IMG/VR virus record: IMGVR_UViG_3300025000_000053
Span: 62,001 to 126,000 of that record
Direction: 5' to 3' (one strand)
DNA length: 64,000 nt
The position numbers and the translations under genes were made by a program. Each line of letters opens with the position of its first letter. The first letter of the stretch is position 1. Below the pieces are notes generated by a model. That model worked only from the letters and a program-made list of their open reading frames with translations. It searched no databases and was not told the DNA's origin. Below are positions 10,729-30,933 of this stretch, in pieces.

Positions 10729-13700
10729 TTAAATATCTTCTTCTATACCATTCATTTTAATCTTAATATAAAAAAGATTTGTATTTTCATTCTCCTTCCT
10801 TTTAACTTGAAATTTATTATTAATATCTCTTATAGATTTAATTCTATCTAAATATTCTTCTTTATTTTCATAATCAAGTGAAACAAAACATTTATTTGGT
10901 TCGTCTTCTTTACGATAACTAAATAAATCTTTTTCAAATAAACATTTAAAACTCTCTGGTTCTCTTGAATCATCAAAGAATAATCCATGAGTTTTACAGA
11001 ATGGTGTTACAATACCTGAAGTTCCCATAATGTTCATATAGATAGTTAATCTATACAGTTCTCCTATGAACTTCCCTAAGCTTTCCTTAGGATATCAGAC
11101 TATATCACCATCTCTATATAATAATATTTAATATAGAGAGTTACCTATTTCGATTTAAGGGATTTTCACCCACTCACTTGAGCCCTACTCCTAATGCTTA
11201 TTTCAAAGCTAAAGGATAGTCGTTGAACTTTATTCTTATATATAATAAGAATCTTAGCTGCGGATCACTCAATCTTTTACCTTGTTACCATACCCTAGAT
11301 AGTTAGTCTAAGCCATTATATTATTACTAATATAACTTGGTAGTAAAAGCTCTAAGAACTTCCCCGACAATTAAAGTAATTTTCATTATAGATTATTCCA
11401 TAATGTCCCAGATTTTACATTTCTAGGATCTGAATTGCCGCATACGTTAATATCGAGCTTCCCAATGTAAGATGGGTGAATATCACGATATTTTTTTGAT
11501 ATCCTATTATCATTCTTGTTCCCAACACTATTCGGTTTTTAATTCACATAGATCGTTAATCTATGCAGTTCTCTTATGAACTTCCTTATCTCTCGATAAG
11601 ATAATAGACTATATCTTCATCCATTATATAATCAGTATAATGGAGTTTCCTATTTCGATTTAAGGGATTCTCACCCACCTACTTAGGCCCTACTCCTATT
11701 GTGTATTCCAACACTAAAGGATAGTCGTTGAACTTTATTGTTATATTAAAAAGTATAGTTTTTTGATATATGCACCCATGAAATCCTTTTTTTTATTTTC
11801 CATATTAATCCATTGTATGCCATATTTATTTGTATATTTTTAGATAACATATTTAATTCCTCTTTTATTTCATAAGTGGAATATTTCTTTTCTAATAAAT
11901 TACATATATCATGAATTAATTTTGCTGAATATTTGTTATACACATGGGATTCACCCTTAGACGGATGTTGTAATCCTTTAATCCATGAATGTTCAATATT
12001 CTCTTTAGGAGTAACCCATTCTAAATTCTTATAATAATTATTACCTTTAAAAGTATCCTTATGATTAATTTGAATAATTTTTTCATTGAAAAATATTTTT
12101 AGTGGTAAAAAATAATATCCAACTAATCTGTGCACATAAAATTTTCTCCTTCTAGTATAAATAGCTACCAATGAACATCTTAAATATCCATCTTTATCAA
12201 CAAATGGTTTTATAAGTTTATCAGTTAGTTTATTTCTAACTCTACCATAATTACTAATTTCATATATGTCTTTTACATTATATTCTATAATGTCTTTCCA
12301 TTCTTCTTCATGGGTTTGAATGTGTATTATCATTTAAAACACCTCTTAATATAACAATCTTAGCTGCGGATTACTCAATCCTAAAACCTTTTTACCATAC
12401 CTTAGTTGATTAGACTAAGCCACTATATTGTTCCCAATATAGTTTGGTAGTTTTAGGCTATAAGAGATTTCCCGACAATTAAAGAAAACACAGGCCCTTA
12501 ATTGACCTTTAATAGTATATCTCAGTTTACTAAAAAAGTCCATATCATTTATTTTATCATCAAATCTCAATAGTCCTGAATCATGTAAATTCTGAATTAA
12601 TATATCGCCTGGGAATTTAAATATTTCTTCAATATTTTCTAAAGTCATTTTATTACCTAAACTTATAACTCTATTCATTCTTTTACTAAATGCTTTAGTT
12701 AATAAAGAAGCAATATATTCATTACATCTTAATCTTTTATTGTCTATAGATAAATTATCTTTCTTTCTTAATTCATCAAAATTTTGAATCATCCATCTGA
12801 TAACTGAATAAACATTCTTTCGATGTTCATAGTCTATCTTCAATATATTCTTAGTAGTTTCATCTATTAATCTATCAAAGAAAACTAAAGTATTTAATCC
12901 TTTTTCATAATAATTATAAGCCATAGTAGCACTTAAGCTACCGATACGTCCAACCCAATACTCTAAATCATTTAAAAATTCAAAACTTAATCTATTATTA
13001 GAAACATTTATAATCATGAAAACTATACTCTGTACATATAGATATTTGTTAAAGAAGAATCTATTTACTTTTATTAATATTTTCTTATTAATACGAAAAT
13101 ATATATATTTGTCTAAATCTACTTCTGTTTCAGTAAATTCTATAATAGAATCTAGTGAGAAATATTTAAGTGTTTTTTCAACACCCATTTTAGCAAAATA
13201 AAATAAAAGTACATCGACTTCTTTTCTAAACACAAATACCCCATAAGTATTAGCAGTATAAGTTTCTCCTTGAGTATCTGGATATTCCTTTTTATTTCTT
13301 TTTAAAGATAATGGCATTAATGATTTAAGAATTAAATTCTGTTTGGTTGTATAAGTTGAACTATCAACAAGTTGATATATTAAGAAATATTTTTTACCTT
13401 TAATAGTGTAATAACCATTTTCATCTGGAATTGGTATTAATAATTTCTTAGTAAATAATTTACTCTTATTCTTACAATTTAAATTAAATCTTAGTTTTAA
13501 TTCCCCATATCGACTATCTTGTAAATACATATATTTTTCTGAAACTTTTTTATTTCCTTCTTTAGTTTGTTTAACTTTCTGTCTTGTTGATATATAATCA
13601 TTGATATCAATCTTAGATTCATCATCAATGAATTCATATCCAAGAAATTTGATATTCTTAAGAATCTCTAATGATTTACAACTATTAGCAATATAATGAA

Positions 13701-13788
13701 TCAATTCATCATCATAATTATGATTAATTATATCATAGTTGATTCTTTCCTCATTTGGGTTATTATAATGAGTTATAAACTTCTTCAT
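10729..13788 (-). CDS. rpoB: Multisubunit RNA polymerase beta-like subunit, N-terminal half (non-virion type); 3 exons, about 563 aa
   Basis: Exons 13788-12505, 11535-11425 and 11025-10729. Splicing gives LRYTIKG|PNSVG...RDIHPSYIG...SDP|GTSGIVTPF, the beta GPGGL/RDVH region. Confidence 0.85.
11026..11424 (-). ncRNA. Group I (IA-like) intron I2, no ORF
   Basis: 5' splice site CCT|, terminal G; core elements AATTGTCGGGGAA, GATCCGCAGC, GTTCAACGACTA, GATATAGTC; P1 TCCT/GGGA. Confidence 0.9.
11536..12504 (-). mobile_element. Group I intron I1 carrying an HNH endonuclease; apparent terminal omega-A
   Basis: 5' splice site GGT| with P1 AGGT/GCCT; canonical P, Q, R, S elements; ORF in the P6a loop; 3' end GTGAATTAAAAA|CCG. 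Confidence 0.85.
11746..12333 (-). CDS. Intron-encoded NUMOD4-HNH homing endonuclease
   Basis: WKDI...YEISNYGRVR, VHRLV, INHKD...NNYYKNLEWVTPKEN. Confidence 0.9.
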   Translation of the reverse strand: MIIHIQTHEEEWKDIIEYNVKDIYEISNYGRVRNKLTDKLIKPFVDKDGYLRCSLVAIYTRRRKFYVHRLVGYYFLPLKIFFNEKIIQINHKDTFKGNNYYKNLEWVTPKENIEHSWIKGLQHPSKGESHVYNKYSAKLIHDICNLLEKKYSTYEIKEELNMLSKNIQINMAYNGLIWKIKKRISWVHISKNYTF

Positions 13789-13838
13789 ATAATTTTTTAT
13801 ACCACCTTTCTAGAAAAATATAATACTATAAACAATTT

Positions 13839-13878
13839 TTATCCAATAGGAAACCAATTAAGGCTTCCTATTGGATAA
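13839..13878 (-). terminator. Hairpin/terminator upstream of the RNAP beta-N gene
   Basis: TTATCCAATAGGAA...TTCCTATTGGATAA, 14-bp stem. Confidence 0.55.
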
Positions 13879-13888
13879 TGTATATTTT

Positions 13889-14254
13889 TTATTCCTCTTC
13901 ATCCTCAGTGGTATTATCATCTTTAACCATGAGTTTAAATTCTTGACCAGGGATTAAGAACGGTGTGAAGTTACCTACTTTTTCACCTTCATCATTTTCC
14001 CTATAAGAAATACCCATGTCAAACAGCTGCATTAAATTGATAGAAATATCTTCCCCAGCAGTTTTCTTTTCATTTAGATAAGCAATTGATTGCTGTAAGA
14101 AACGATATGCAATCGTTGCAATTGCTGGTGCATGTGTAACATTAATGTTGTGTTCACTGATAAGAGCTTTATTTGCTCTTTCACAAATTTTAGTAATTTC
14201 CTTCTGATTCTCTCTGATTTCCAAAAATACTGCATCATCCTTATTACTTGCCAT
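13889..14254 (-). CDS. Small conserved-looking protein, possibly HU/IHF-like
   Basis: C-terminal NFTPFLIPGQEFKLMVK echoes the HU P-x-F-x-P-G-x2-L-K motif (weak). Confidence 0.6.
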   Translation of the reverse strand: MASNKDDAVFLEIRENQKEITKICERANKALISEHNINVTHAPAIATIAYRFLQQSIAYLNEKKTAGEDISINLMQLFDMGISYRENDEGEKVGNFTPFLIPGQEFKLMVKDDNTTEDEEE

Positions 14255-14305
14255 AATAAATAACCTCCCCTTATTTTTTAATACTAATATTTTGTTATTA
14301 GCATA

Positions 14306-14851
14306 TTAGTTTTTAATTTTATTAAATTTAAAAATGATATCATGTAATTTCATAGTCATAAATTCATCTTCTTTTGAGTACAGTTTTTCACTAAATTTGT
14401 ATTCAAGAGCTTGACTTAAAAAAGCATGAACTATAGTGAAAATCGCATCAGATGAAGTGATATTGATATCAAATTTCATTAAAAGAATATCATTAGCCAT
14501 ATCACAAAGTTCATTATTCTTTTCATCAGTGTTTAATAAAATAGCAACTTCTGAATTAGTTTCCCGTTCAATATAATCATCATGAACAGGTTTTATTAAA
14601 TAAATAATGTCTTGAACTTTACTATTCATATAGCAAAAAAGATTAATATCATCTAACTGTATTCTACTTTCTTTATTCTTTTCTCTATCAATTAAACCAT
14701 GTAAAAAAGCATACACAATTGTAGCAACCGATGGATATAATAAAATATCTATATTATTTAATTCATATAATCTTTTAGATGTTCTCTTACAAATTTCTCT
14801 TTCAGAATCATTTATTTTTATTAACAAACAGTCCAGATCAATACTACTCAA
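14306..14851 (-). CDS. Hypothetical protein with two repeats homologous to the N-terminus of 13889..14254
   Basis: EICKRTSK..ATIVYAFL and ELCDMAND..FTIVHAFL versus KICERANK..ATIAYRFL. Confidence 0.65.
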   Translation of the reverse strand: MSSIDLDCLLIKINDSEREICKRTSKRLYELNNIDILLYPSVATIVYAFLHGLIDREKNKESRIQLDDINLFCYMNSKVQDIIYLIKPVHDDYIERETNSEVAILLNTDEKNNELCDMANDILLMKFDINITSSDAIFTIVHAFLSQALEYKFSEKLYSKEDEFMTMKLHDIIFKFNKIKN

Positions 14852-14873
14852 CTGTCACAAAACCCCCTGTGTA

Positions 14874-17036
14874 TCAATTTTTTCTTTCATATTTAAATAT
14901 TTTGTAAGCATCCTCTAATGTTACAATAGGTATATAATCTTTTTTAGCTTTATCAACTTTAGATGATTGAACACCTAAATCTTTTACAACTACCATATCA
15001 ATCCCTTTATTATAATTATCAACAACTAGTATGTTTTTATCGTCAAGGAATTTTTCAAATTCCCTATCACGGATTTTAGTAAAACATACTTTACCAATAT
15101 ATTCACGCAAATCTTCTTTTATAACTAATTCGGAACATAAGAAATTTATAAGTTCAATATTACTATTTACTCCTTTAATTATCTTTTCAGCTGTTTTATT
15201 TTTTATTCCTCCTATCATAGTTAATTTTTTTACATCATTATTTAAACATATATCTTTTAATTCATTCAAATAATATATATTTAAAATACGTTTAAATATT
15301 TTTCTCCCTATATCGGGTATCCCCAAAGAACCTAATAATTCATAGTTATAAACAGTTTTACGACTTTTAATACTATCAACTATTTTATTAAATATTTTTT
15401 CACCAAATCCTTTAAATAATAGGATTGTTTGTTTATGATCTTTAATAAAGTATAAATCTTTAATACTTTTTACAACACCTAATTCATATAATAATGTGAT
15501 AATACCACTAGAAATATTAGGTATAGATATCTTTTCAGCATAATTTATAATTTTACCTATTTTTCTAGAATCACAATTTTCATTAACACATTTTAATATA
15601 GGATCTTTAACTAATGGTTGTTTACAATAACGACATTCTGTTGGAGTTTTAAATAGTTTACCTTTTTCATTTCTTTTACAAGTTTCATCTATAATTAAAT
15701 ATGGAATTACATCATACTTAATTATAACTTCATCACCTTTTCTTAATTTACGTTCTTCAAATGTATCTATAGAACCTAAAGAAATATTAGTTATTGTATT
15801 ACCATTTATTTTAACTGGTTCAATTATAGCAACAGGTGCTATTGAACCTAAAATACCAGTTGACATTATAACATCTTTAATTATAGTTCTTTTTTGTTCA
15901 GGTGGTAACTTATATGCAACTTCAAATTTATTAATATTATTTTCTCTCCCAAGTTGTTTAATGGTATTTTCATTTGCAAGAGTTATAACAACACCATCAA
16001 TCGGGATACCATCTTTTCTAACTGAACGAACCATAGTTTCTATAACTCGTTCAATATAATCAAAGTCAGTAATATCTTCAATTAAACTAAATCCTATTCT
16101 ACTATTTAAAATTGATGTAGCAAATTCATCACTTATTCTCTGATATTGAAGAGGTATTATTGTTAGATATTTTAAAAGATTTTTATTTATATCTTTACTT
16201 GTATTAAGAATTGATGAAACTGCACTTCTTGAACTTTTTAATATTCTTTCATTCTTACAAAATTCTTCAAAATCAAAATCCTTCATAATAATTTCTGTTT
16301 TTACACCATAGTCCTCATTAAATATCATAAACTCATATTTATTATCGTCACACATCATAACCTCTTTATAATATTTAATATCTACAAGACCAAAATTAAA
16401 TTTGATTCCATTAAATAAATCAGTTATATCTATTGCTTCATTATTATCAACATCACCTCTAGTTAAAACTTTGTCAGCTGTTTTTAAATTAGATTTAAAT
16501 TCAAAAATACCAGATATACCATCATATTTTGGTGTCATTCTAGCAACTTTCTCAACATTATTTAACTTTCTCCCTAATTTATTTTCAATACCTTTTATCC
16601 AATCTTCTAAAGATTTTCTATTATCCTTTCCCTTATCTTTCTTTCTAATAAAATGAATTTTATCTAAAGTACCTCTTAAAGCTGGATAACTGTGATAACC
16701 TATTTTTCTATCTTTAACTTTATTAATAGGAGCACCAACAATTTCTTTCATTTGTAAGTCTTTGTTCAGTTCATATAATCTATCATAATCTTCATCACTA
16801 ACAGGAGAATCAACTTCACTATTATTATAAATATCTTGCAGTATCTTTATTATTAATTCAATAATAATTAAATCATCTGAATTATAATTTTCAGTCCCAC
16901 TTAATAAAATATTTATAATTCTATTAATTCCAATGGTATTTAATTTTTCTACAATCACTTCATAATCATCAAAAATATCTAATCTTTCAACAAAAATAAC
17001 TGATAATGAATCAATAATATTTTTTTTGTCTAACAT
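14874..17036 (-). CDS. ligA: NAD-dependent DNA ligase
   Basis: TPKYDG adenylation motif, TRGD, DGVVI, AYK, C4 zinc finger, HhH and BRCT-like C-terminus. Confidence 0.95.
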   Translation of the reverse strand: MLDKKNIIDSLSVIFVERLDIFDDYEVIVEKLNTIGINRIINILLSGTENYNSDDLIIIELIIKILQDIYNNSEVDSPVSDEDYDRLYELNKDLQMKEIVGAPINKVKDRKIGYHSYPALRGTLDKIHFIRKKDKGKDNRKSLEDWIKGIENKLGRKLNNVEKVARMTPKYDGISGIFEFKSNLKTADKVLTRGDVDNNEAIDITDLFNGIKFNFGLVDIKYYKEVMMCDDNKYEFMIFNEDYGVKTEIIMKDFDFEEFCKNERILKSSRSAVSSILNTSKDINKNLLKYLTIIPLQYQRISDEFATSILNSRIGFSLIEDITDFDYIERVIETMVRSVRKDGIPIDGVVITLANENTIKQLGRENNINKFEVAYKLPPEQKRTIIKDVIMSTGILGSIAPVAIIEPVKINGNTITNISLGSIDTFEERKLRKGDEVIIKYDVIPYLIIDETCKRNEKGKLFKTPTECRYCKQPLVKDPILKCVNENCDSRKIGKIINYAEKISIPNISSGIITLLYELGVVKSIKDLYFIKDHKQTILLFKGFGEKIFNKIVDSIKSRKTVYNYELLGSLGIPDIGRKIFKRILNIYYLNELKDICLNNDVKKLTMIGGIKNKTAEKIIKGVNSNIELINFLCSELVIKEDLREYIGKVCFTKIRDREFEKFLDDKNILVVDNYNKGIDMVVVKDLGVQSSKVDKAKKDYIPIVTLEDAYKIFKYERKN

Positions 17037-17129
17037 ATTAAAGCCTCCTAAAGTTTTTATATTATGTTAAATATATAATATATAAATAAAAAATAAAGGT
17101 TATTATTTTAACCTTCATTTTATTTGTTT

Positions 17130-18137
17130 TTAATATCCTTGGTATCCTTCTTCAATTTTTTCTATAAAATTAATTTCATACTTGTTAAGTTTAAAGGTTT
17201 GTATTCCAATCCATGAAGAATAAGTTGGATAAATTTCTCCTTTGTGTTTAAATGCAGGAAACCTAAACCCTGTTTTAGTTATAACTGTTAATAATTTACT
17301 ATTTCTTTTTGTACTTTCATTTTTAATACTAGGGTATCCACCTTCATACAAAGAATATCCATCTACTACAATATAGTCCTTATATTTAAGTTGTTTTGTA
17401 GTATAATATACTCTCATTAATAAACCAGAAACCAATTTAGCTTTAGTAGAAGATTTATATCTATCATAATGGTAATCCTTGGTTTTTCTATGAAGAACAA
17501 GTTTCTTTCCATTATCCATATAAGAAACAAATTCTCCATTTTCAAGTACAAATAATCTAATTTCATATTGTCTATTAGGATTTACAGTAAATCTTGGGGT
17601 GGAACCAAAAATAATATGTGTATTTATAATTTTTCTATTAATAAAATCTAAAACAAAATTATATTTACCATATTTTTTATTACAATTAAAATCAAATTTT
17701 GCAATATTTATTAAGGTGATTTTACAAGTTTTGTTTGCATAAAACATAAAACGGTCTGTTAAATTACTGACGGATTCAACTCTATGAATAAAAACTTGCG
17801 GAAATTCATTTAAACTATTAATTTCTGTTATATTATATTTAAAAATTATTATATGATAACCTGGTTTAATCATAACTTTGGCTTGTTCATATTGATTAAT
17901 TTTTTTTGTATTATTAATGTATTCAGTATCACTATATCCATCACGGGTTATACCAATTGGTCTATTAAACTTTTCATCTGTTATTACCATAGCATATTCA
18001 TTTGGTTTTACAAATTCAGTTAAAAAACAATTTTTTAATTTATTTTCGAAATAAATATTGTATTTTTTATTAACTTCTGTTGTATCAAGTTCATATAAAT
18101 TTAAATCAATAGGTTCATCAAGTGTATCAACAATCAC
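17130..18137 (-). CDS. Hypothetical protein
   Basis: 335-aa ORF; AAGGAG SD; promoter motif at 18193. Confidence 0.7.
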   Translation of the reverse strand: MIVDTLDEPIDLNLYELDTTEVNKKYNIYFENKLKNCFLTEFVKPNEYAMVITDEKFNRPIGITRDGYSDTEYINNTKKINQYEQAKVMIKPGYHIIIFKYNITEINSLNEFPQVFIHRVESVSNLTDRFMFYANKTCKITLINIAKFDFNCNKKYGKYNFVLDFINRKIINTHIIFGSTPRFTVNPNRQYEIRLFVLENGEFVSYMDNGKKLVLHRKTKDYHYDRYKSSTKAKLVSGLLMRVYYTTKQLKYKDYIVVDGYSLYEGGYPSIKNESTKRNSKLLTVITKTGFRFPAFKHKGEIYPTYSSWIGIQTFKLNKYEINFIEKIEEGYQGY

Positions 18138-18241
18138 AAAAACATCTCCTTTATTTTTATAAACTTTTCAAAATTGTTTATTTGTTATTATAATAATATA
18201 TAAATGAAAAAAATGAGGATTTAAGTATCCTCAATGATTTT

Positions 18242-19396
18242 TTAAAATCTAGCACCTTTAAATAAAAGCTTTAAATAATCTTCAGAAACAAAAACATCAC
18301 CAATATCTTTCATTTTTGGTATTTCTTTTTCTGGTTTAGGTTCAGAAGGTTGAATGGGAGTGAGAATGTCTAACGATTTTTTATTTTCAGCTTTTTTCTT
18401 TTTAAACTTATTGTATTCCATTATAAAAATATCAGGTAGTCCTGATATACATGTATCATTAAACTTGGTTCTAACTGTAGCATACCAAGTTAATGCCTCA
18501 TTGTGTAAACTTTGAACAGTATTAGCATTAAATAAATTTTTATTTACTTTAAAGAAATTTAATAATTGTAATTGGTCAATTTCTTTTGAATTACTTAAAA
18601 AATCATTTATATATTTTTTAAGTAATTTTATATTACCTTCATTACAAATAATCAAAGGATTATTCTGTTTCTTAAAAGAAATTACATCCTCAAGAATAAT
18701 CCTTTTCATAATCATTAATACTGTTTTTTCTGATAAGCCATTAAACAATTTTTTTACATCTTCATCATCCGCAATATCACTAAACGACTTTAATTTATCA
18801 TTAACCGTTTTAATAACTTCGACATCATCCAATAATGACAATGATTTTATTAAATCATTATATTCGGTGCCCAGTTCAATCTTAAGTGCTACGCCTATAT
18901 TTTTAATAAAGAAAGTTATCAATTCGTCTTTTACTAAATCTAGTGAGCAATTATTTAAAATTTCTTTTTCAATAAGGTTAACTTCTGGTTTTGTTGGTTC
19001 TATAACAGTAACAACGATTTTATCAACTTCGGTGGTATCTTGGGCTGAAGTTGTTGTTTCTTTTTTTTCATCACCGGTTTTTAATACAAAACCAGTAGAT
19101 AAATCATTGATTATATCATCGGTCTCAATAACAAGACCTTTAACATGTTCATTGACAAGTTCACTCATATTTTTAAACTCATCAATGATATTGTTTTCAT
19201 CTGAAAAATTTTCTTTCAAAAAAGTAATAACATTATCTTTTTCCCAAATTCCTCCAGGAACATGAATGTCATTAAGATAGGATTCATGTTCCTCAATAAA
19301 TTTTTTAAATTCACCCTCTGTATTAACATCTGTTGGAAGATTGTCAAAAAGTTCTTTTAAAATCTCCATTTTTTTCTTACCTAGATCACCAGCCAT
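18242..19396 (-). CDS. Hypothetical acidic/helical protein
   Basis: 384-aa ORF; AAGGAGG SD; promoter motif at 19487. Confidence 0.75.
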   Translation of the reverse strand: MAGDLGKKKMEILKELFDNLPTDVNTEGEFKKFIEEHESYLNDIHVPGGIWEKDNVITFLKENFSDENNIIDEFKNMSELVNEHVKGLVIETDDIINDLSTGFVLKTGDEKKETTTSAQDTTEVDKIVVTVIEPTKPEVNLIEKEILNNCSLDLVKDELITFFIKNIGVALKIELGTEYNDLIKSLSLLDDVEVIKTVNDKLKSFSDIADDEDVKKLFNGLSEKTVLMIMKRIILEDVISFKKQNNPLIICNEGNIKLLKKYINDFLSNSKEIDQLQLLNFFKVNKNLFNANTVQSLHNEALTWYATVRTKFNDTCISGLPDIFIMEYNKFKKKKAENKKSLDILTPIQPSEPKPEKEIPKMKDIGDVFVSEDYLKLLFKGARF

Positions 19397-19561
19397 ACAT
19401 TTTACCTCCTTAAATTTATATTTTTTTTATAATATTTACATAAGAATGGAACATAGATAAATTGAATCTTTTATTTATCTATAGTAATAATATATATTTG
19501 TAATGATGGAAATACGGAAAATCAATATACCGACATAATATTATGTCGGTATATTTTATTA

Positions 19562-22446
19562 TTATATTTTAATATCAATAACAAATTTTCCTTCATTAAA
19601 TTTCCTTTTTTCAATCTCATCATCTATAAGTTTTTCAAAATCTCTTTTAGTTCCAACAAATACTTTATTTTCTTTATATTCATTAGTAATGTCAATTCTT
19701 CTTTTAATATCTTCAAATTTTTTATTATCAGTTAAGAAGAACTTTCCATTATAAAATTTACCTTCAAGATGTCCAGTATTAATCTTTATATCAAATAGGT
19801 CATTATTAAATTCTATACCTAATCCCATTGATTTTAAAAATACCGATAATATTTCAATATTTCTATTTTTAAAATTTGCTTTATACTTAAAATCTTTTAT
19901 AGGATTTAATCTTGTCATTAAATTTTTACCTAAATCACGTCTACCTATAACTGATGACCTATAGAATAGATGTAGTTGAGCTATTAGTTCAGTTGGAACC
20001 CCTATATTAGTATTAAGATTTTCATCAATACCTATTCTTATAGGAGTTTTAGAATAAAGTTCCTGGTGAGTTTTAGCTTTATTAGATTTTTCAGGTAATC
20101 CTTTTCTTGATAAAGTTCCAGTTGATCTAGCTGAAAAACCTTTCTTAGCTGTTTGCATTAATTTCATTACATACATATCTCCAACTATTAATTTCTTCAT
20201 CATTTTAATCTTTCTACCAAATCTATTTACATAAACATCATATTGTTCAATCCAATCATGTTCTTCATATAATTTAATAAGTTTATCAAATAAGAATTCC
20301 TCTTCCCATAAAGGAGGTATATGAATAAATATACCTTCTTCAACTAAATTATTGAAAAATTCTTCCTTACCAATGATACTCAATTTTCTTAAATATTCTC
20401 TTAACTTTTCTTCCTGGTCTTTATTAAAATAACTTATTATATTAAGAAACAAATCTTCTTTTTCTTTCATATTAGTCAGTGTTTGAATACGGTCCACTGT
20501 TCTATTGCATATAAACGTAATTGATTGTTCAAAAAGCTGGTATGAGTTTACAATTGTTTTAGACCATATCTTCAGTCCTATAAAGAACTGCCTCCCGTTT
20601 CGGGTTTCCCCTACTCTACTCGCTTCTTCAGTTATAGATAAATTATAACTTATGCTTTCGATGGCCGTTGAGCACATTTCAAATATTACTATTTGAAACT
20701 TCGCTGCGGATTACTCAATTTTAAACCTTTTTACCATATCTGAGTAGTTACTTCAGCCCTTATCTATGTCACCATGATAAGTTGGTAGTTTAAAATTATC
20801 GAACTTTCCCGCAATTAGAGAGGTTTTAGATCGCCTAAACCTTACCAGTCCAGCGATTGATTACAGATATTGAATTAAATAGAATATCAACACGCTCTCC
20901 AGTTTCTAAGAATGGCATTTCATTATCAGGTAATATTTTTGATATAACACCTTTATTACCATATCTCGTTAAATTCACATAGATCGTTAATCTATGCAGT
21001 TCTCTTATGAACTTCCCTAAGTTTCCTTAGGATACTAGACTATCTCTTCATCTCTATAAAATAATATAGAGAGTTACCCACTTCGATTTAAGGGGATTTC
21101 ACCCACTCACTTGAGCCCTACTCCTAATGCTTATTTCAAAGCTAAAGGATAGTCGTTGAACTTTATTCCTCATTATAAGGAATCTTAGCTGCGGATTACT
21201 CAATCTTTTTATTATATAATAAAAAGCTCTAAGAGCTTCCCCGACAATTAAAGTAATTTTCTATATATGTTACCATATATAGGGGCTAAGCTACATAACC
21301 CGTTATTTTTTGCCCTACTTCTAAATAAGCATTTTTTTCAACTAAAAATTCTATTACTATATTAGAAAATACCGAGTTATTTTCTTCTCTCCACTTATAC
21401 TTTTCATCTAATATATTCTTAGCTTTTCTCATATAAAAACTAACTTCTCTAGAATATTTAGAACCAGAATCAATTATCTGTTTACATCTTTTAAATATCT
21501 TCTCATAATAAACTAATTGCATTTTATAATATTTCATTATTTGTCTATTAAAATCATTTTCTTCTAATTCATCTAAAGTTTTATTACAATAGATATCTAT
21601 ATCAATAATTTTACCTTTACCCTCAATAAAGAATAATACATCTGAAGTAAAATCAATCTTTCTAAGATTAGATTTCTTTAAATCATATAACAATTGATTG
21701 TTATGAATTCTTCTCTTAGCACAAATTACCTTATCTTTAACATATTCATTTATATCAGGAAAAGTTTTATAATTATTACTATTGCCATAAATATTACAAA
21801 ATATATCATTATCATTTAAAGAAACTTTAACTCTTTCAACTTCTGTTGAAACCATTCTTTTTGATAATGACTCAGAACAAACAATAGCATCTTCAATAGT
21901 ATTATTTTCTAAAAGGTACATAAATTTAACATTAGTACCATAACAATAATTCATATCATCATCATAAGATGTACTCTTATAAAGAACTTCGCCTTTATTT
22001 ATTGAATTACCAACTTCTTTATTATCAATATTATTGGTATTATACTTAAAACCATATCTTTCTGTTAAGTCTTCTACAGATTTCTTTTCTATAATATCAT
22101 ATTTATCATTTTCTTTATCATATACAAATAATAAATAAAATTGTTCTTCATTTTTATCATCTGTAAATTTACTTATTTTATCAATAATAACACAATTATT
22201 TTTAACCTTTTTGAAACCAGTAGAATTCTTACCTACTATATTCTCATAATTAGTAAAAATTCTTGGAAACTCAGGTTCATTTAAAGTAACACATTGTTTC
22301 AAATGAGCAGTAAACATAACATTCCTTGATGAACTAATATATCCTGGATTAGTTAATAACGTCATCCCAAATATATCATCTTTACCTTTAAATTCTTTTT
22401 CTTTCTCTTGTAGTATCTCTTTTAGTGACATTGTGGTTTTATACAA
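19562..22446 (-). CDS. rpoB: Multisubunit RNA polymerase beta-like subunit, C-terminal half (non-virion type); 3 exons, about 750 aa
   Basis: Exons 22446-21298, 20966-20852 and 20550-19562. Splicing restores GQKITG|RYGNKGVIS and INR-L-NSYQLFE; also IEDAI, YVMKL, ARSTG. Confidence 0.9.
20551..20851 (-). ncRNA. Divergent group I intron I4 lacking P2 and P9 (phase 1)
   Basis: P1 ATCGCT|/GGCGAT with U-G pair; P10 TAAACT/GGTTTA; P7 GGCCA/TGGTC; only 11 nt from P7 to terminal G. Confidence 0.85.
20967..21297 (-). ncRNA. Group I intron I3, no ORF
   Basis: GGT| 5' site, terminal G before AGA TAT GGT; canonical core; P9 CCTAAG-GAAA-CTTAGG. Confidence 0.9.
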
Positions 22447-22536
22447 TAACTTTACCTCCTTATTTAAAAATTATTATAGAGAATGTATATTCATATAATA
22501 TATAAATACACATTCTCTAGTTTTTATTATAAAAGT

Positions 22537-24491
22537 TTATGCCGCTTCTTTAAATTGTTTATCTTGTGATTTTTCTAATCTATCGCATAATTCAAAAATA
22601 TTTAACAATTGACCATTTTCTTCTGGTTCAACATGTGATAATTGTTTTTCCAATATAGGTAATGATCTATTAAATAATTCATATCTTAATTTTTCATTAG
22701 TAAGAAATTCTTTTCTAAATTTCCTACTATCAAATTTAATATCTTTTACTCCTTCAATATATTTATAAGGATTACGTCCAGCAATTAACTCATTATCTTC
22801 AGCAAATCTTAATTGAGTTAAAATTGGATCAAATCCAGTAGACTGATCATATATAAGATTTACAAATTGACCAGCTTTATTTGTTCTAGATTTTAAAAAT
22901 TCAGCTCTTACACCAAAACCATCAAAACCATGTTCATCTTTTTTAAATTTTTCTGAACCTATAGCTATGAAGTTTATTAATAAATTAGCATAATAAATCG
23001 TATATTCACATTAGTCGTCAGCCAATGCAGTTCTCTTCTCTTATGAACTTCCTTATCTTTCGATAAGATACTAGACTATATCTTCATCCTTAATAAATTA
23101 TTTATTAAGGAGTTACCCATTTCGTAAAGAACTTTTTAAGTTCACCCTACCATTATTGACTTGTAGGTCTACTCCTCAGTCTAAATTAGACTTCATCAGA
23201 TAGTCGTTGAACCTTTCTCATAGTAATAATATGAGACTTGGCTGCGGATTACTCAATCTTTTTATTATATAATAAAAAGCTCTAAGAGCTTCCCCGACAA
23301 TTAAAGTAATACTAACATAATATTACTATTATGCCACCCTAAATTTAGGTGCATTCCCACCCGTAAAGTTCACATAGGTCGTTAGTCTATGCAGTTCTCT
23401 TATGAACTTCCTTATCTTTCAATAAGATACCAGACTATATCATTAACCTAATAATTTCTTATTGGGCTACTTCCTATTTCGATTTAAGGGATTTTCACCC
23501 ACTCACTTGAGCCCTACTCCTAATGATCATTTCAGATCCACTGGGATAGTCGTTGAACTTTATTCTAATAATTTACTAGAATCTTAGCTGCGGATTACTC
23601 AATCCTAAAACCTTGTTATTAATATAATTTAGTAGTTTTAGGCTCTAAGAGCTTCCCCGACAATTAAAGAAGTTTTCAACATACATTTCTGTATGAGGCC
23701 CCACAAATCTCTAGTTTAGGGATACTCTGGTCCATCTTCATATATAATAATTGTGGTTGTGTTTTATGCATCGGATTTATTTCCATCTTTTGATTAATGT
23801 GGTTTATAGCAATAACATTTATATTATATGCTTTTATAATTGGCATTAATCTTTTATAGAATTGAGCTAATGCTTTAGCAACTCTATTGGCATATGTCCC
23901 ACCTTCCATTTCATTAGAAGTATCTTTTGAAGCAACTGTTGGTATTGAATCAATAATCATTACAGTTGGAACAAATGCCTTTATTGGTCTATTAAATTCA
24001 TCAACTAATCCAGTATTATACATATAATCTTTTCTATTAGCTTCTTTTTCTTGAGCTATTTCTACTATACTATTAAAAATATCTTCAATATAATTTTTTT
24101 CTTGCTTTAAAATATATTTATCATCAAGTTCTTGTTGAGTCATAGATGTTACATTTTTTATTCTAGTATATGATAAAACTTGTTCTAAATCAAAATGTTG
24201 AACAAATGCATTGTCACTGAATCGTCTAACAATATTAGCTGCAATCTGAATAGCAAAAGTAGTTTTGGCAGTACCAGACTTACCTATAATTGTCATAAAT
24301 GTGCCACCCACTATACCAATAGATGAATAAGTTGTTATGAGTTCCTCATCCAAATTCCTAACTTCAATCATATATCCATTTCTATAGTCAAATGGTACAA
24401 ATCCTGTTGGATAACAAATAGAAGTTTGTGTTGCATTAAATAATCCTTTTTTATCCTTTTCTCTTAATCTTGAAAGCATTTTATTAGCCAT
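22537..24491 (-). CDS. recA: RecA/UvsX-like recombinase; 3 exons, about 416 aa
   Basis: Walker A GKSGTAKT, IIDS, INHI. Exons 24491-23718, 23361-23347 (15 nt) and 22998-22537 give DQSIP|GGNAP|IYYAN, equivalent to RecA GGxALKFYAS. Confidence 0.9.
22999..23346 (-). ncRNA. Group I intron I6, no ORF
   Basis: CCT| 5' site with P1 CACCT/GGGTG; terminal G before ATT TAT TAT; canonical R and S elements. Confidence 0.9.
23362..23717 (-). ncRNA. Group I intron I5, no ORF
   Basis: CCT| 5' site (P1 weak), terminal G before GGT GGG AAT; canonical core. Confidence 0.85.
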
Positions 24492-24613: not shown

Positions 24614-25540
24614 TTAGTACTTTAGTTTTAAAATCTTACCATTATTCAACATAATAAAGAATAGTTTAAAGTTATGCTCTAATTGAGATAGAGCTTTTGA
24701 ATAAAATTTCTTAGCCCTGTTGTTAAGATATTCGGAATCAATAAATAATGTTACCGCACTAAATCTTTCTCCTTTTATTTTTTCAATAATAGAAGGTAAT
24801 TCCATGTTATTGAATTCAACAATGTTGAAAGCAGTTTCATTACTATATTTCGAATGTAATTGATGCAGCTGATTTTTTTCTGACCTAAGTGTGAAAATAG
24901 TGTGAGTTGGTCTATTGGGCCTAAAATTAGATACAATAAACGGTGTATATTTATCCCCATTTTTAGACTCAACTATTTTCTTAGAAAATAGTAATTCTCT
25001 AACTTTATTAGTTACTTCGATTTCCTCACCATTAACTTCTGTTATACCTCCAACATTATTTTCAACAATACTAAAGGTATAAATCATATCGGATTTAGTG
25101 TGTTTATCATAAATCCTAATTTCCAATGGTTTGTCCTTATTATTTAAGGCCGCAATAAAAGTTAATTCTCCATCAAGAGAATAATTTTCCAATAAACATA
25201 TAAAATCTTTACTAATATTGACAAGCATACGCTTACCAATATTTAAAGTAACTAACACAATGTCAGTATTGTTATCAACTCTTTTATTCTCAATTATAAA
25301 CGGGTTAAAATCTTTTTTCCCGTAAATAAGACTTGTTAATGCATTATTTAAAATAACAGGTTCCTTCATTTTAATAAGTTTTGATAAAACATCATTTGAA
25401 GGAATAAGATGTTTCATAGCACGAATAAAACAATGCATATCAAATACAGGTGAATCCTTTCTCTTAAAAAACGCACCAGTTTTGTCATTCAATTCATTAT
25501 TGCTCCAGGATCTTGTACTTTCATTAAAAAGTATTATCAT
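24614..25540 (-). CDS. Hypothetical protein, paralogue of 25579..26499
   Basis: Shared motifs (F/L)NE..K/RxW, KD(F/L)NPFII, RPxRPT. Confidence 0.75.
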   Translation of the reverse strand: MIILFNESTRSWSNNELNDKTGAFFKRKDSPVFDMHCFIRAMKHLIPSNDVLSKLIKMKEPVILNNALTSLIYGKKDFNPFIIENKRVDNNTDIVLVTLNIGKRMLVNISKDFICLLENYSLDGELTFIAALNNKDKPLEIRIYDKHTKSDMIYTFSIVENNVGGITEVNGEEIEVTNKVRELLFSKKIVESKNGDKYTPFIVSNFRPNRPTHTIFTLRSEKNQLHQLHSKYSNETAFNIVEFNNMELPSIIEKIKGERFSAVTLFIDSEYLNNRAKKFYSKALSQLEHNFKLFFIMLNNGKILKLKY

Positions 25541-25578: not shown

Positions 25579-26499
25579 TTAAAACTTATATTGTATTAAA
25601 GAACAGTTGTTCAATAAAATATACACCACTTTGAATTTTGTTGTGAGTTCTCTTAGAACTACTTTATATTTTTCTTTAATAATATCAATTGATTCGTTAG
25701 AATCAATAAATAAAGTAATAACACTGTAATTGAGCTGTTTTACTTCATCAATAAGTTTTATTAAATCTTCCGTTTCATTACCATTCTCATTGAAATAAGT
25801 ATATAAAGTATAATATATAATATTATCCTTAACAACCTTTTTCATGGTACTTTCCATTTTTTGATAACTATCACCGGAACATATAACTATCTGTGTAGGT
25901 CTTTTGGGTCTAGTATTTTCTATCTTTAAAGCAGGTGGGGTAAATGCTCTCACCACTTTTTCTATCTGTTTCTTATAAACTAAATTACCATTTTGATCAT
26001 ACTCAACATTATAACGAATAATATCTTTTTCTTTCTTATCAAATGCATAAATTGTAAATTTAGACTTAAGATTAGAATCCATTGAAATGATTAAATTCAA
26101 CTCATCGGCATTATTGATATGCTCAATGATGAAATTTTTACCCATTTCTAAATTATAAATAACTTTATCCCTAATATCTAAATTCATAAGAAGTACGTTT
26201 CTATTATTCCCATTTCTTGATTGTATAATGAAAGGATTTAAATCTTTATATCCAAACAAAACACTTGTATCATCACTACATACTTTAACAATTTCTGTGG
26301 TTTTAGTTACACTTTCAATATCATTTTTAACTTTGTTTAAAAAATCTTGATTTGCAGATGTTAAAAATAATCTACAATTAAGATAATGAATCTCTCTGTC
26401 TTTCCCTATGACTTCACAGTTCTTACTTATCTTTAAGAAATTCTTTCTTCTATCTGGGGTTTCCCATTTTTTCTCTGTCTCATTTAATAAAAATATCAT
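25579..26499 (-). CDS. Hypothetical protein, paralogue of 24614..25540
   Basis: Same shared motifs; GGAGG SD. Confidence 0.75.
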   Translation of the reverse strand: MIFLLNETEKKWETPDRRKNFLKISKNCEVIGKDREIHYLNCRLFLTSANQDFLNKVKNDIESVTKTTEIVKVCSDDTSVLFGYKDLNPFIIQSRNGNNRNVLLMNLDIRDKVIYNLEMGKNFIIEHINNADELNLIISMDSNLKSKFTIYAFDKKEKDIIRYNVEYDQNGNLVYKKQIEKVVRAFTPPALKIENTRPKRPTQIVICSGDSYQKMESTMKKVVKDNIIYYTLYTYFNENGNETEDLIKLIDEVKQLNYSVITLFIDSNESIDIIKEKYKVVLRELTTKFKVVYILLNNCSLIQYKF

Positions 26500-29887: not shown

Positions 29888-30933
29888 TTATTTTAAAGAT
29901 TTTTTAACCAATAAACCTTTTGTAACTAGATCACTAGAAATTCCCATTGATATTAAATGCACATCAATTAAATTTAATGTTACCTTATTTTCAACATTAT
30001 TAGTTAAACTATCTAAAGAAACAAATCCTTTTTGGGCTATAAAGGCATACATTTCATTTTTCATAACCATATCATCTGCTCTAGGCGTAAAAGTTCATAT
30101 TGTTTGTTAAACAATACAGTTCTCTTATGAACTTCCCTAACTTTCATTAGGATACCAGACTATATCATTAACCTAATAATTTCTTATTGGGCTACTTCCT
30201 ATTTCGATTTAAGGGATTTTCACCCACTCACTTGAGCCCTACTCCTGTTGCTTATTTCAAAGCTAAAGGATAGTCGTTGAACCTTTCTCTAATATATTAG
30301 AGACTTAGCTGCGGATCACTCAATCTTTTTATTATATAATAAAAAGCTCTAAGAGCTTCCCCGACAATTAAAGAAGTTTTCTATATATGTTACCACATAT
30401 AGGGGCTAAGCTATGTAACCCATGAGTTCTCGTAATGCATCATTAGCTCCAACAGATAATAAAGAAAAGTTTTCTTGATCTGATTCCCTAGCATTTTTAT
30501 CTTCACCAACAACCTGACCAGTCATTGCAGAACGACTTGAACTCTTTGTTGATAAAGTATTTTTTTTACTTAAGAATTGTTGCATTCTTTTAATATGGAC
30601 ATAACCAACAGGTACTTCATATTTAGTAATAATTGGATTATCAATACTGTTATTGACAAAAGGTACTACAACTCTTTCAAATAAAGGTATATCTAATACT
30701 TTTGCAGCTTTTGTTATATTTTCAATATTTAATTCTCTTTCATAATCAATCATATCTAAAATAAGATATTGCTCAATATCTTTAAAAAATTCTTTAAAAA
30801 ATATATCAAATTGATTATCAGACATTGATTGAAACATGTCTTTATATTTTTTAGTATTCGCATCTGTTGGGTCTAATGCACTAAATGTATCATAAATCAA
30901 TTTTTCCATTTTTTTTCTTTTGTCTTTAGTCAT
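29888..30933 (-). CDS. rpoB: Second RNA polymerase beta-like C-terminal subunit (probably virion RNAP); 2 exons, about 237 aa
   Basis: Exons 30933-30418 and 30085-29888. VGYVHIKRMQQ, TGQV, ARESDQE, ELMG|PRADD match the beta YMxKL...QRxGEME...ExLTxKSDD region. Confidence 0.8.
30086..30417 (-). ncRNA. Group I intron I7, no ORF
   Basis: GGT| 5' site (P1 GGGT/GCCC), terminal G before CCT AGA GCA; canonical core. Confidence 0.9.

What the first reader, a model, noticed from the sequence alone, without database searches (positions are those of the whole stretch)
22999..23717. recA split by back-to-back group I introns around a 15-nt micro-exon encoding GGNAP
Seen: intron I5 ends ...TTTACG| then GGT GGG AAT GCA CCT (23361-23347), and intron I6 starts immediately. 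The third exon (22998-22537, 153 aa) is missing from the ORF track. The spliced product DQSIP|GGNAP|IYYAN matches the RecA GG-x-A-L-K-F-Y motif next to DNA-binding loop L2 (established). Both introns are phase 0 and both 5' sites read CCT|AAA, so skipping the micro-exon would give an in-frame RecA lacking GG. The micro-exon must serve both as P1 substrate for I6 and as 3' exon for I5. Inference: ordered or coupled splicing, possibly regulatory. Caveat: I could find only a weak P1 for I5.
Basis: partly seen in the sequence, partly recalled or inferred. Interest (0 to 1): 0.72.

Follow-up and report, generated by a model that had tools for sequence, protein, structure and literature searches.

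The report
Phage recombinase gene, two introns, 15-nt exon
A RecA-like (UvsX-type) recombinase gene of an uncultured giant groundwater phage is split by two self-splicing group I introns only 15 bases apart, a tidy but not unprecedented result of selfish introns piling into the most conserved part of a gene.

Summary
Rfam finds two complete group I introns on the minus strand: 23727-23410 (68.3 bits) and 23357-23051 (67.9 bits); the cut-off is 50. The 416-aa product then aligns without a gap to uninterrupted UvsX-like recombinases of AR9-like jumbo phages.

At least ten distinct intron-less metagenomic relatives have exactly 15 nt (mostly GGNAP) at this spot. Three related phages from the same metagenome (one also seen in a second data set) share the double intron. 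Their intron helices, including P1 of I5, show compensatory changes, and both large exons have dN/dS of about 0.06. So both introns very probably splice and the micro-exon is kept.

The two introns are only 63% alike. Both belong to a family with at least 12 ORF-less copies in this 250-kb genome. The same genome has a second back-to-back pair, around a 20-nt exon in an RNA polymerase beta gene.

I found no evidence for coupled, ordered or regulatory splicing, and no RNA data were available. Published precedents cover small internal exons, exon skipping and recA introns. This is a new member of a known kind, of moderate interest.

The parts
23718..24491 (-). Exon 1 of the UvsX-like recombinase (258 codons: Walker A GKSGTAKT, core ATPase, loop L2 region). 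Ends ...CAG AGT ATC CCT.
   Evidence: PHROG 97 UvsX-like recombinase at E 8.4e-27. tblastn to the UvsX-like genes of AR9, PBS1, MarsHill and LPJP1.
23362..23717 (-). Group I intron I5, 356 nt, no ORF. P1 pairs exon CCCU (23721-23718) with the guide GGGG (23702-23699). An in-frame TGA lies at 23678-23676. The last base is G at 23362.
   Evidence: Rfam RF00028 at 68.3 bits over 23727-23410. In L008/L034, P1 is ACCU/GGGU, a compensatory change. Family covariation is shown.
23347..23361 (-). Micro-exon GGTGGGAATGCACCT = Gly-Gly-Asn-Ala-Pro. It corresponds to RecA G211-G212-N-A-L (E. coli numbering from memory). Its 3' eight bases, AUGCACCU, form the exon strand of I6's P1.
   Evidence: The spliced product aligns gap-free. 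The intron-less relatives (13 IMG/VR loci, 8 distinct sequences, plus 5 JGI metagenome loci that partly repeat them) have exactly 15 nt here. It is identical in three intron-bearing phages.
22999..23346 (-). Group I intron I6, 348 nt, no ORF. The guide sequence GGGUG (23339-23335) plus CAU (23333-23331) pairs with CACCU and AUG of the micro-exon. An in-frame TAA lies at 23331-23329. The last base is G at 22999.
   Evidence: Rfam RF00028 at 67.9 bits over 23357-23051. The P1 energy is -7.5 kcal/mol, the minimum for the local 41 nt.
22537..22998 (-). Exon 3 (153 codons plus TAA), starting ATT TAT TAT GCT AAT = IYYAN. It has no start codon of its own for 115 codons.
   Evidence: PHROG 97 at E 3.6e-5. 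dN/dS is 0.058-0.066 among the three intron-bearing phages.

Best explanation
Two separate ORF-less group I introns sit 15 nt apart in the uvsX-like recombinase gene of an AR9/PBS1-like jumbo phage. They look like subgroup IA, with extra hairpins (P7.1/P7.2) ahead of the 3' strand of P3. The insertion points are equivalent to E. coli RecA T210|G211 and L215|K216 (numbering from memory).

Each intron recognises its own 5' splice site through its own guide sequence. I5 pairs GGGG with exon CCCU. I6 pairs GGGUG..CAU with micro-exon CACCU and AUG. Each ends in the usual terminal G.

Inference: each intron excises itself by the standard two transesterifications. Either order would give exon1-GGNAP-exon3 and a full 416-aa recombinase. 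The micro-exon is simply what is left of a highly conserved segment between two neighbouring insertion sites. It is not a device.

Shown: the intron identity, the junctions, the retention of the 5 codons in homologues, and purifying selection on both large exons. Inferred: that splicing occurs, is efficient, and needs no fixed order.
For: - Rfam full-length matches at 68.3 and 67.9 bits, cut-off 50.
- The spliced product aligns gap-free with six uninterrupted phage homologues.
- The intron-less relatives carry exactly 15 nt coding GGNAP, GGVAP, GGFAP or CGHAA: 13 IMG/VR loci with 8 distinct sequences, plus 5 JGI metagenome loci that partly repeat them.
- Both exon bases before the splice sites are T, as P1 needs. 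Intron-less relatives use CCA, CCG, CCC or CCT at those codons.
- The same architecture occurs in three diverged phages, with exons about 90% identical in nt. A 99.8%-identical contig listed under another data-set number covers I6, the micro-exon and the last 124 nt of I5. An assembly artefact is therefore excluded.
- Compensatory changes occur in P1 of I5 (CCCU/GGGG against ACCU/GGGU), P6, P8, P9 and P9.2. In a 12-member family alignment, 30 of 60 consensus pairs show double changes.
- dN/dS is 0.05-0.07 for exon 1 and for exon 3 among the intron-bearing phages. Exon 3 cannot be translated on its own.
- I5 is 80-82% identical to introns elsewhere in the genome but only 63% to I6, so the two insertions were independent.
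- A second pair of the same kind brackets a 20-nt exon in an RNAP beta gene of the same genome.
Against: - There is no RNA evidence. The only metatranscriptome runs listed for the study are 2-3 million letters of SOLiD data and hold none of the sequence. The read-laying run failed on a filter.
- P1 of I5 has only 4 exon-guide pairs, and I found no convincing P10 for it.
- A hairpin within the micro-exon (I5's terminal G plus GGUG, pairing with CACCU) scores -6.7 kcal/mol. That is close to I6's P1 at -7.5 and could slow or order splicing.
- Published cases show that similar neighbouring phage introns can skip the exon between them (PMC11878797, PMC3073962).
Confidence: 0.85

Rival explanations
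1. Ordered or coupled splicing with a regulatory role. Splicing of one intron gates the other. Alternatively, a controlled fraction of transcripts skips the micro-exon and yields an in-frame UvsX without GGNAP that modulates recombination.
For: - Skipping is in frame.
- The two introns share nearly identical 3' tails, and both 5' sites end CCU, so cross-reaction is chemically plausible.
- The micro-exon hairpin uses I5's terminal G and I6's splice-site U. It loses about 1.3 kcal/mol once I5 is removed (-6.7 to -5.4, against P1 at -7.5). That would mildly favour I5 splicing first.
- A 52-nt block spanning the micro-exon and P1-P2 of I6 is invariant in three phages whose introns are otherwise 84-88% identical.
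- Exon skipping is documented for Twort and SIOphi (PMC3073962, PMC11878797).
Against: - Every relative at 80% identity or less lacks both introns, so they are dispensable recent arrivals.
- The introns belong to a genome-wide selfish family, and a second micro-exon occurs in an unrelated gene.
- The family alignment has G259 invariant and P257 and G258 nearly so, so a product without GGNAP is probably inactive.
- The energy differences are small and ignore tertiary structure.
- Three sequences are too few to read the invariant block as selection.
Confidence: 0.08
2. A tandem composite intron that splices as one unit, like the cox3-640 tandem group IA intron of Ophiostoma ips. In that case the 15 nt is a pseudo-exon that is normally removed.
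For: - Such tandem units are reported to splice as one piece (PMC12308204).
- In SIOphi the dominant in vitro variant joins the first 5' site to the second 3' site (PMC11878797).
Against: - The 15 nt code exactly the five residues that all intron-less homologues have at this position, in frame and with only synonymous differences from the 80% relative: GGTGGGAATGCACCT against GGTGGAAATGCACCA.
- I6 has a complete P1 built on the micro-exon.
- Removing GG would delete a nearly invariant motif of the family.
Confidence: 0.04
3. A decaying gene. The introns no longer splice and the recombinase is a pseudogene, or it is made as two separate polypeptides.
For: - The introns carry no homing endonuclease gene.
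- I5 of the relative L008 scores below Rfam's cut-off (46.7 bits).
Against: - dN/dS is about 0.06 on both sides of the introns in three lineages.
- Helices are kept by compensatory changes.
- Exon 3 lacks a start codon and a ribosome-binding context.
Confidence: 0.03

Closest known systems
Multi-intron phage genes with small internal exons and exon skipping: Twort orf142 (three similar group I introns, some transcripts lack one exon); phiNIT1 ribonucleotide reductase large subunit (a small extra exon between two introns); SIOphi (internal exon skipped). Sources: PMC3073962, PMC11878797.
   Same: - Several related ORF-less or reduced group I introns sit in one essential phage gene.
- A short exon lies between two of them.
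- The similar intron ends make skipping conceivable.
   Different: - The host gene is a UvsX-like recombinase of an AR9-like jumbo phage.
- The exon is only 15 nt, 5 codons of an invariant motif. The main text of the 2025 paper does not give the size of the phiNIT1 small exon, so I cannot say which is smaller.
- The arrangement occurs twice in one genome.
- There are no splicing data here.
Micro-exons between organellar group I introns: the placozoan cox1 single-base exon flanked by two group IB introns (PMC5436844), and the possible Ophiostoma cob 18-nt exon between two group IB introns (PMC12308204).
   Same: A second self-splicing intron inserted next to an existing one, isolating a tiny piece of a conserved coding segment. 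Both introns must splice for the protein to be made.
   Different: Those are mitochondrial, mostly endonuclease-bearing IB introns. Here the setting is a phage genome with compact ORF-less IA-type introns from one intragenomic family.
Group I introns in recA-family genes: recA of the Bacillus cereus/anthracis group and recA of B. thuringiensis phage 0305phi8-36 (PMC2504315, PMC3984707).
   Same: A group I intron interrupts a RecA-family recombinase gene. The intron is often without an endonuclease gene and phage-related.
   Different: Those genes carry a single intron at one site; I could not retrieve that site. Here two introns bracket the GG motif. The cultured AR9-like phages have no intron in this gene.
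Intron-rich RNA polymerase genes of AR9/PBS1-like and Staphylococcus jumbo phages (MarsHill non-virion RNAP beta is annotated as joined from 4 pieces).
   Same: The same phage lineage and the same habit of group I introns in core genes. Intron cores are 69-77% identical to those of Staphylococcus and Bacillus phages.
   Different: In those isolates uvsX is uninterrupted.

Membership tests
Group I catalytic intron (Rfam RF00028) | Full-length match to the covariance model above the curated gathering score | tested here: met
   I5 scores 68.3 bits and I6 67.9 bits against a cut-off of 50, both over model positions 1-253.
Group I catalytic intron (Rfam RF00028) | 5' exon ends in U, which forms a U-G wobble with an internal guide sequence (P1) | tested here: met
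   I5 pairs CCCU with GGGG; the relative has ACCU with GGGU, a compensatory change. I6 pairs (AUG)CACCU with GGGUG-G-CAU at -7.5 kcal/mol. Family members each have a guide matching their own exon.
Group I catalytic intron (Rfam RF00028) | Intron ends in a terminal G at the 3' splice site | tested here: met
   The introns end ...UUUACG| and ...AUAUACG|. Ten paralogues in the same genome and both L008 orthologues end their conserved tail in [C/U]G just before the exon.
Group I catalytic intron (Rfam RF00028) | Conserved core helices P3-P8 maintained by covariation | tested here: met
   RNAalifold on 12 family members finds 60 pairs, 30 with double compensatory changes. The MAFFT alignment is poor at P1 and P7-P8, so not every helix was recovered.
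Group I catalytic intron (Rfam RF00028) | Self-splicing with guanosine and Mg2+ | not testable with these tools
   No RNA data were available. The indirect support is dN/dS of about 0.06 on the downstream exon.
Subgroup IA (phage-type) group I introns | Extra P7.1/P7.2 hairpins between P7 and the 3' strand of P3 | tested here: inconclusive
   A 70-75 nt insert at that position contains two hairpin-like stretches (UGGAUC..GAUCA and GGGUGAAAAUCCC), seen in the Rfam alignment. No subgroup-specific model was run.
RecA/UvsX recombinase family | RecA-fold ATPase with Walker A, and significant profile similarity to RecA/UvsX | tested here: met
   Walker A is GKSGTAKT. PHROG 97 UvsX-like scores E 8.4e-27. 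The family profile hits a phage recombinase (7z3m, 3.6e-16), a phage UvsX (9gbg, 1.5e-12), RecA structures (about 1e-11) and T4 UvsX (3io5, 6e-10).
RecA/UvsX recombinase family | Pfam PF00154 (bacterial RecA) above the gathering score | tested here: not met
   Scores are 19.2 bits for exon 1 and 23.6 bits for the full-length 80% relative, against a cut-off of 27. It is a divergent phage UvsX-like member, not bacterial recA.
RecA/UvsX recombinase family | GG motif following loop L2 (E. coli GGNALKFY) | tested here: met
   The profile aligns ipGGkaliYlan with TTGGNALKFYAS. G259 is invariant and P257 and G258 nearly so in 14 homologues.
Mobile (homing) group I intron | Intron-encoded homing endonuclease ORF | tested here: not met
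   Neither intron has a sense ORF of 30 aa or more. Three HNH_3-like ORFs lie elsewhere in the genome. A relative, L016, has a NUMOD4/HNH-bearing intron 3 nt upstream of the I5 site.
Twintron (intron within intron, or tandem unit spliced as one) | One intron interrupts the other, or the intervening sequence is not part of the mature mRNA | tested here: not met
   Both ribozymes are contiguous. The 15 nt between them code the residues present in all intron-less homologues. Whether some transcripts splice as one unit is not testable here.

The most novel reading that the evidence does not exclude
The double intron acts as a splicing switch. The micro-exon hairpin mimics I6's guide sequence and involves I5's terminal G. 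It could impose I5-before-I6 order, or divert a condition-dependent fraction of transcripts to a micro-exon-skipped, GG-less UvsX that poisons or tunes recombination filaments. The 52-nt invariant block in three phages would reflect that function.
Probability: 0.07. Interest if true: 0.7.

Novelty: new member of a known kind. Interest (0 to 1): 0.4.

Why it matters
- **Annotation.** Gene callers miss both the 5-codon exon and the 153-codon exon 3, and report a truncated 271-aa protein. The same genome hides a 20-nt exon in an RNA polymerase gene. Intron-aware annotation of jumbo-phage metagenomes is therefore needed.
- **Biology.** The case shows how densely ORF-less group I introns can pack into the most conserved codons of phage core genes. 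This genome has at least 12 copies.
- **Experiment.** It offers a compact natural substrate of about 720 nt for testing how two neighbouring ribozymes share a 15-nt exon: order of removal, fidelity and skipping. Recent phage work has raised that question without resolving it.

Tried and rejected
- **Read evidence.** I have no read-level check of the assembly and no DNA or RNA joints.
- **RNA runs.** Only three tiny SOLiD metatranscriptomes of the same study were listed, and each holds 0.00 of the sampled words. None was shown to hold the sequence.
- **Papers not held.** Landthaler & Shub 1999 (PMC22036) and Ko et al. 2002 (PMC135159) are not in the library. The Twort exon sizes and the B. anthracis recA insertion site could not be checked. 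I cite them only through reviews.
- **Single-intron intermediates.** I looked for relatives with only I5 or only I6 in IMG/VR and JGI metagenome contigs and found none. Loci have both or neither, and one has a different endonuclease-bearing intron.
- **Local duplication.** Rejected as the origin of the pair. I5 and I6 are 63% identical, while I5 is 80-82% identical to copies elsewhere.
- **Assembly chimera.** Rejected. Three diverged genomes share the arrangement, and a near-identical contig listed under another data-set number covers part of it.
- **P10 for I5.** I found no convincing pairing between the micro-exon's 5' half and the guide strand, by inspection only.
- **L016 splice junctions.** They could not be resolved. 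The natural P1 and terminal G give three extra residues (YLH) before PGG, and Rfam gives no hit, probably because of the 293-aa ORF in P6.
- **Local folds.** Folding around each P1 is not better than shuffles (z -0.93 and +0.46). Thermodynamics alone say little here.

Full report
**Context**

The window is bases 62001-126000 of a 249,853-bp IMG/VR virus record. CheckV rates it 100% complete and it has 25% G+C. It was assembled from a groundwater metagenome.

The gene in question lies on the minus strand, directly upstream of an intron-split RNA polymerase beta gene. The uninterrupted homologues of LPJP1, BpSp and MarsHill have the same neighbour. Its closest cultured relatives are the UvsX-like recombinases of Bacillus phages AR9, PBS1 and BpSp, Listeria phage LPJP1 and the Staphylococcus jumbo phages, at 34-38% identity. 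Exon 1 matches PHROG 97, 'UvsX-like recombinase', at E 8.4e-27. Pfam's bacterial RecA model stays below its cut-off. 'recA' should therefore read 'UvsX-like RecA-family recombinase of an AR9-like jumbo phage'.

**The observation**

| Part | Window coordinates (minus strand) | Length |
|---|---|---|
| Exon 1 | 24491-23718 | 774 nt |
| Intron I5 | 23717-23362 | 356 nt |
| Micro-exon | 23361-23347 | 15 nt |
| Intron I6 | 23346-22999 | 348 nt |
| Exon 3 | 22998-22537 | 153 codons plus stop |

- Rfam RF00028 matches both introns over the whole model, at 68.3 and 67.9 bits against a gathering score of 50.
- The micro-exon is GGTGGGAATGCACCT, which reads GGNAP.
- Both introns are phase 0.
- Exon 3 has no in-frame start codon for 115 codons, so an ORF list shows only a 38-aa tail.
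- Read-through from exon 1 stops at a TGA 13 codons into I5. Read-through from the micro-exon stops at a TAA 5 codons into I6.

**Are the junctions right?**

Joining the three exons gives a 416-aa protein. It aligns without any gap across the junctions to six uninterrupted homologues. KMDQSIP|GGNAP|IYYANLLI matches KQDESIPGGTSCIYLANTLL in AR9 and KQDESIPGGGSAIYLANTLI in BpSp.

Scans of IMG/VR and of JGI metagenome contigs gave stronger evidence.
- Thirteen viral loci (8 distinct sequences) and five metagenome loci, which partly repeat them, are intron-less. They are 59-80% identical in protein.
- In every one, exactly 15 nt separate the exon-1 and exon-3 homologues.
- Those 15 nt code GGNAP, GGVAP, GGFAP or CGHAA.
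- The 80% relative has GGTGGAAATGCACCA, which differs from the micro-exon only at two synonymous third positions.
- Both intron-bearing splice sites follow a T, as P1 requires. Intron-less alleles use CCA, CCG, CCC or CCT there.

A profile of the family aligns ipGGkaliYlan with E. coli RecA TTGGNALKFYAS. I5 therefore sits at the equivalent of T210|G211 and I6 at L215|K216 (E. coli numbering from memory), immediately after DNA-binding loop L2. In 14 homologues the second G is invariant, and the first G and the preceding P are nearly so.

**Is it real DNA and is it used?**

Three related phages carry the same double intron: the window's contig, L034 (= L008) and L035. All three contigs come from one metagenome assembly, and their recombinases are 94-96% identical in protein. 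A contig listed under another data-set number (L023) is 99.8% identical over window 12632-23485; it covers I6, the micro-exon and the last 124 nt of I5. An assembly chimera is excluded.

| Segment | Identity among the three phages |
|---|---|
| Large exons | about 90% nt |
| Introns | 84-88% nt over aligned bases, with large indels in P5 and P6 |
| Micro-exon | identical |

dN/dS is 0.05-0.07 for exon 1 and, separately, for exon 3. Exon 3 cannot be translated without splicing. Purifying selection on it is therefore indirect evidence that both introns splice in vivo.

**Ribozyme structure**

The two introns share the group I core and a conserved 3' tail with two hairpins (AGUUC/GAACU and GCAUAG/CUAUGU) before the terminal G. 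A 70-75 nt insert ahead of the 3' strand of P3 holds two hairpins and looks like the P7.1/P7.2 of subgroup IA. I ran no subgroup model.

- **P1 of I5.** It is nevertheless supported by covariation. In L008/L034 the exon reads ACCU and the guide GGGU. The paralogue at genome 135175-135526 uses the same CCCU/GGGG.
- **P1 of I6.** It is stronger: CACCU with GGGUG, extended by AUG with CAU across one bulged G. At -7.5 kcal/mol it is the minimum-energy fold of the local 41 nt.
- **Orthologue comparison.** Compensatory changes occur in P6, P8, P9 and P9.2.
- **Family alignment.** Across 12 members, 30 of 60 consensus pairs show double changes.

**Origin**

The genome holds 12 group I matches above Rfam's cut-off and 4 weaker ones. 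Most share the same 3' tail.

- I5 is 80-82% identical to copies at genome positions 92135, 40520 and 135175, but only 63% to I6. The pair therefore arose by two insertions, not by a local duplication.
- Peripheral helices are mosaic between copies. For example, P5 and P6 of I6 in L008 equal those of the intron at 227052. This suggests recombination among intron copies.
- Neither intron has an ORF.
- Three HNH_3-like ORFs lie elsewhere in the genome.
- A 61%-identical relative, L016, carries a different 1.27-kb insert with group I core motifs (Rfam gives no match) and a 293-aa NUMOD4/HNH ORF, 3 nt upstream of the I5 site. This stretch of the gene is thus a repeated target.

**The pattern recurs**

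The same genome has a second back-to-back pair, at 177368-177713 and 177732-178088. I worked out its junctions.
- Exon 1 ends ...GNTRD, with P1 of GGGAU/GUCCC.
- A 20-nt exon, GATAGCATAAGAACAGCGAT, lies at genome 177722-177741.
- The next intron has P1 of GCGAU/GUCGC.
- The spliced reading NTRD-DSIRTAM-SVKQSKH aligns gap-free to the uninterrupted RNA polymerase beta subunits of LPJP1 and Staphylococcus phage SA1.

Micro-exons here are therefore a recurrent by-product of intron crowding at conserved sites.

The micro-exon does serve both as 3' exon of I5 and as P1 substrate of I6. The roles use different halves, and I see no P10 for I5, so nothing forces an order. Either intron can go first, and each half-spliced RNA remains a normal substrate for the other.

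Two features could still matter.
- **Micro-exon hairpin.** Gly-Gly and Ala-Pro codons are mutually complementary. I5's terminal G plus GGUG can pair with CACCU at -6.7 kcal/mol, falling to -5.4 once I5 is gone. This competes with I6's P1 at -7.5. It would mildly favour I5 first, but the margin is small. The complementarity also exists in intron-less alleles.
- **Invariant block.** A 52-nt block covering the last 3 nt of I5, the micro-exon and P1-P2 of I6 is invariant in the three phages. With three sequences this is only suggestive.

Skipping is chemically plausible. The 3' tails are similar and both 5' sites end CCU. It has been seen in Twort and SIOphi (PMC3073962, PMC11878797). Its product, however, would lack a nearly invariant motif. 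The introns are absent from every relative at 80% identity or less, which argues against a built-in regulatory role. I put regulated or ordered splicing at about 0.08.

**Comparison with what is known**

- Phage genes with two or three introns, a small exon between two introns (phiNIT1) and exon skipping are known (PMC11878797).
- Micro-exons of 1 nt, and possibly 18 nt, between group I introns are known in mitochondria (PMC5436844, PMC12308204).

What is new is the host gene and lineage, the very small size of the exon, its position on the GG motif, and its occurrence twice in one phage genome.

**Verdict**

It is a new member of a known kind. It has moderate interest and practical value for annotation, and it would make a good substrate for splicing experiments.

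Noticed in passing
Own genome G000:C1:177374-178137 (outside the window; L007 1374-2137): A second back-to-back group I pair lies in an RNA polymerase beta gene, around a 20-nt micro-exon (G000 177722-177741, GATAGCATAAGAACAGCGAT, DSIRTA+M). It aligns gap-free to the uninterrupted beta subunits of Listeria phage LPJP1 and Staphylococcus phage SA1.
   Followed up: yes
Own genome, 16 places; in the window 20541-20882, 21015-21307 and 30086-30427, all on the minus strand: The 250-kb phage genome has 12 group I intron matches above Rfam's cut-off and 4 weaker ones. Most share a conserved 3' tail, GAAGTTCATAAGAGAACTGCATAG..TAACGA.CTATGTGAA....CG. The RNAP beta gene just downstream of uvsX holds two of them.
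   Followed up: partly
L016 3778-5044 (IMGVR_UViG_3300001528_000360): A 61%-identical relative has a 1.27-kb insert with group I core motifs (no Rfam match) and a 293-aa NUMOD4/HNH ORF, inserted 3 nt upstream of the I5 site. The natural P1 and terminal G would add three residues (YLH) before PGG. The sequence ATGTACCT is repeated at both borders. The junction is unresolved.
   Followed up: partly
Alignment A4: I6 of L008 against the intron at G000 227052-227419; I6 of the window against the introns at 92135 and 228152: The peripheral helices P5 and P6 are swapped between intron copies at different loci. This mosaic pattern suggests recombination or gene conversion among the intron paralogues.
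   Followed up: no
G000 135175-135526 (-), locus L027: An intron 82% identical to I5 uses the same 5' site, CCCT|AAAC, and the same guide GGGG in an unrelated exon context. This is compatible with guide-directed spread to a new site. I did not identify the host gene.
   Followed up: no
Window 24614-25540 and 25579-26499 (-): Two tandem paralogous ORFs of about 307 aa lie directly upstream of uvsX, with similar C-terminal ends (..TLFIDS...). Their function is unknown and I did not search them.
   Followed up: no
L007 2400-2510 and 2541-2897 (G000 about 178400-178900): A partial group I core (Rfam 25.9 bits, model 60-141) is followed by a 118-aa ORF on the opposite strand. Both lie between two parts of the RNAP beta gene, ahead of the next coding part at L007 3189. 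This may be a degenerate or ORF-bearing third intron, or a gene split.
   Followed up: no
G000 52229-52351 (-), 17972-18106 (+), 73998-74138 (-; window 11998-12138): Three HNH_3-like endonuclease ORFs are present. The one at 52 kb lies next to a weak group I match (51698-51915). The one in the window has an internal TAA in the match to the L016 endonuclease.
   Followed up: no
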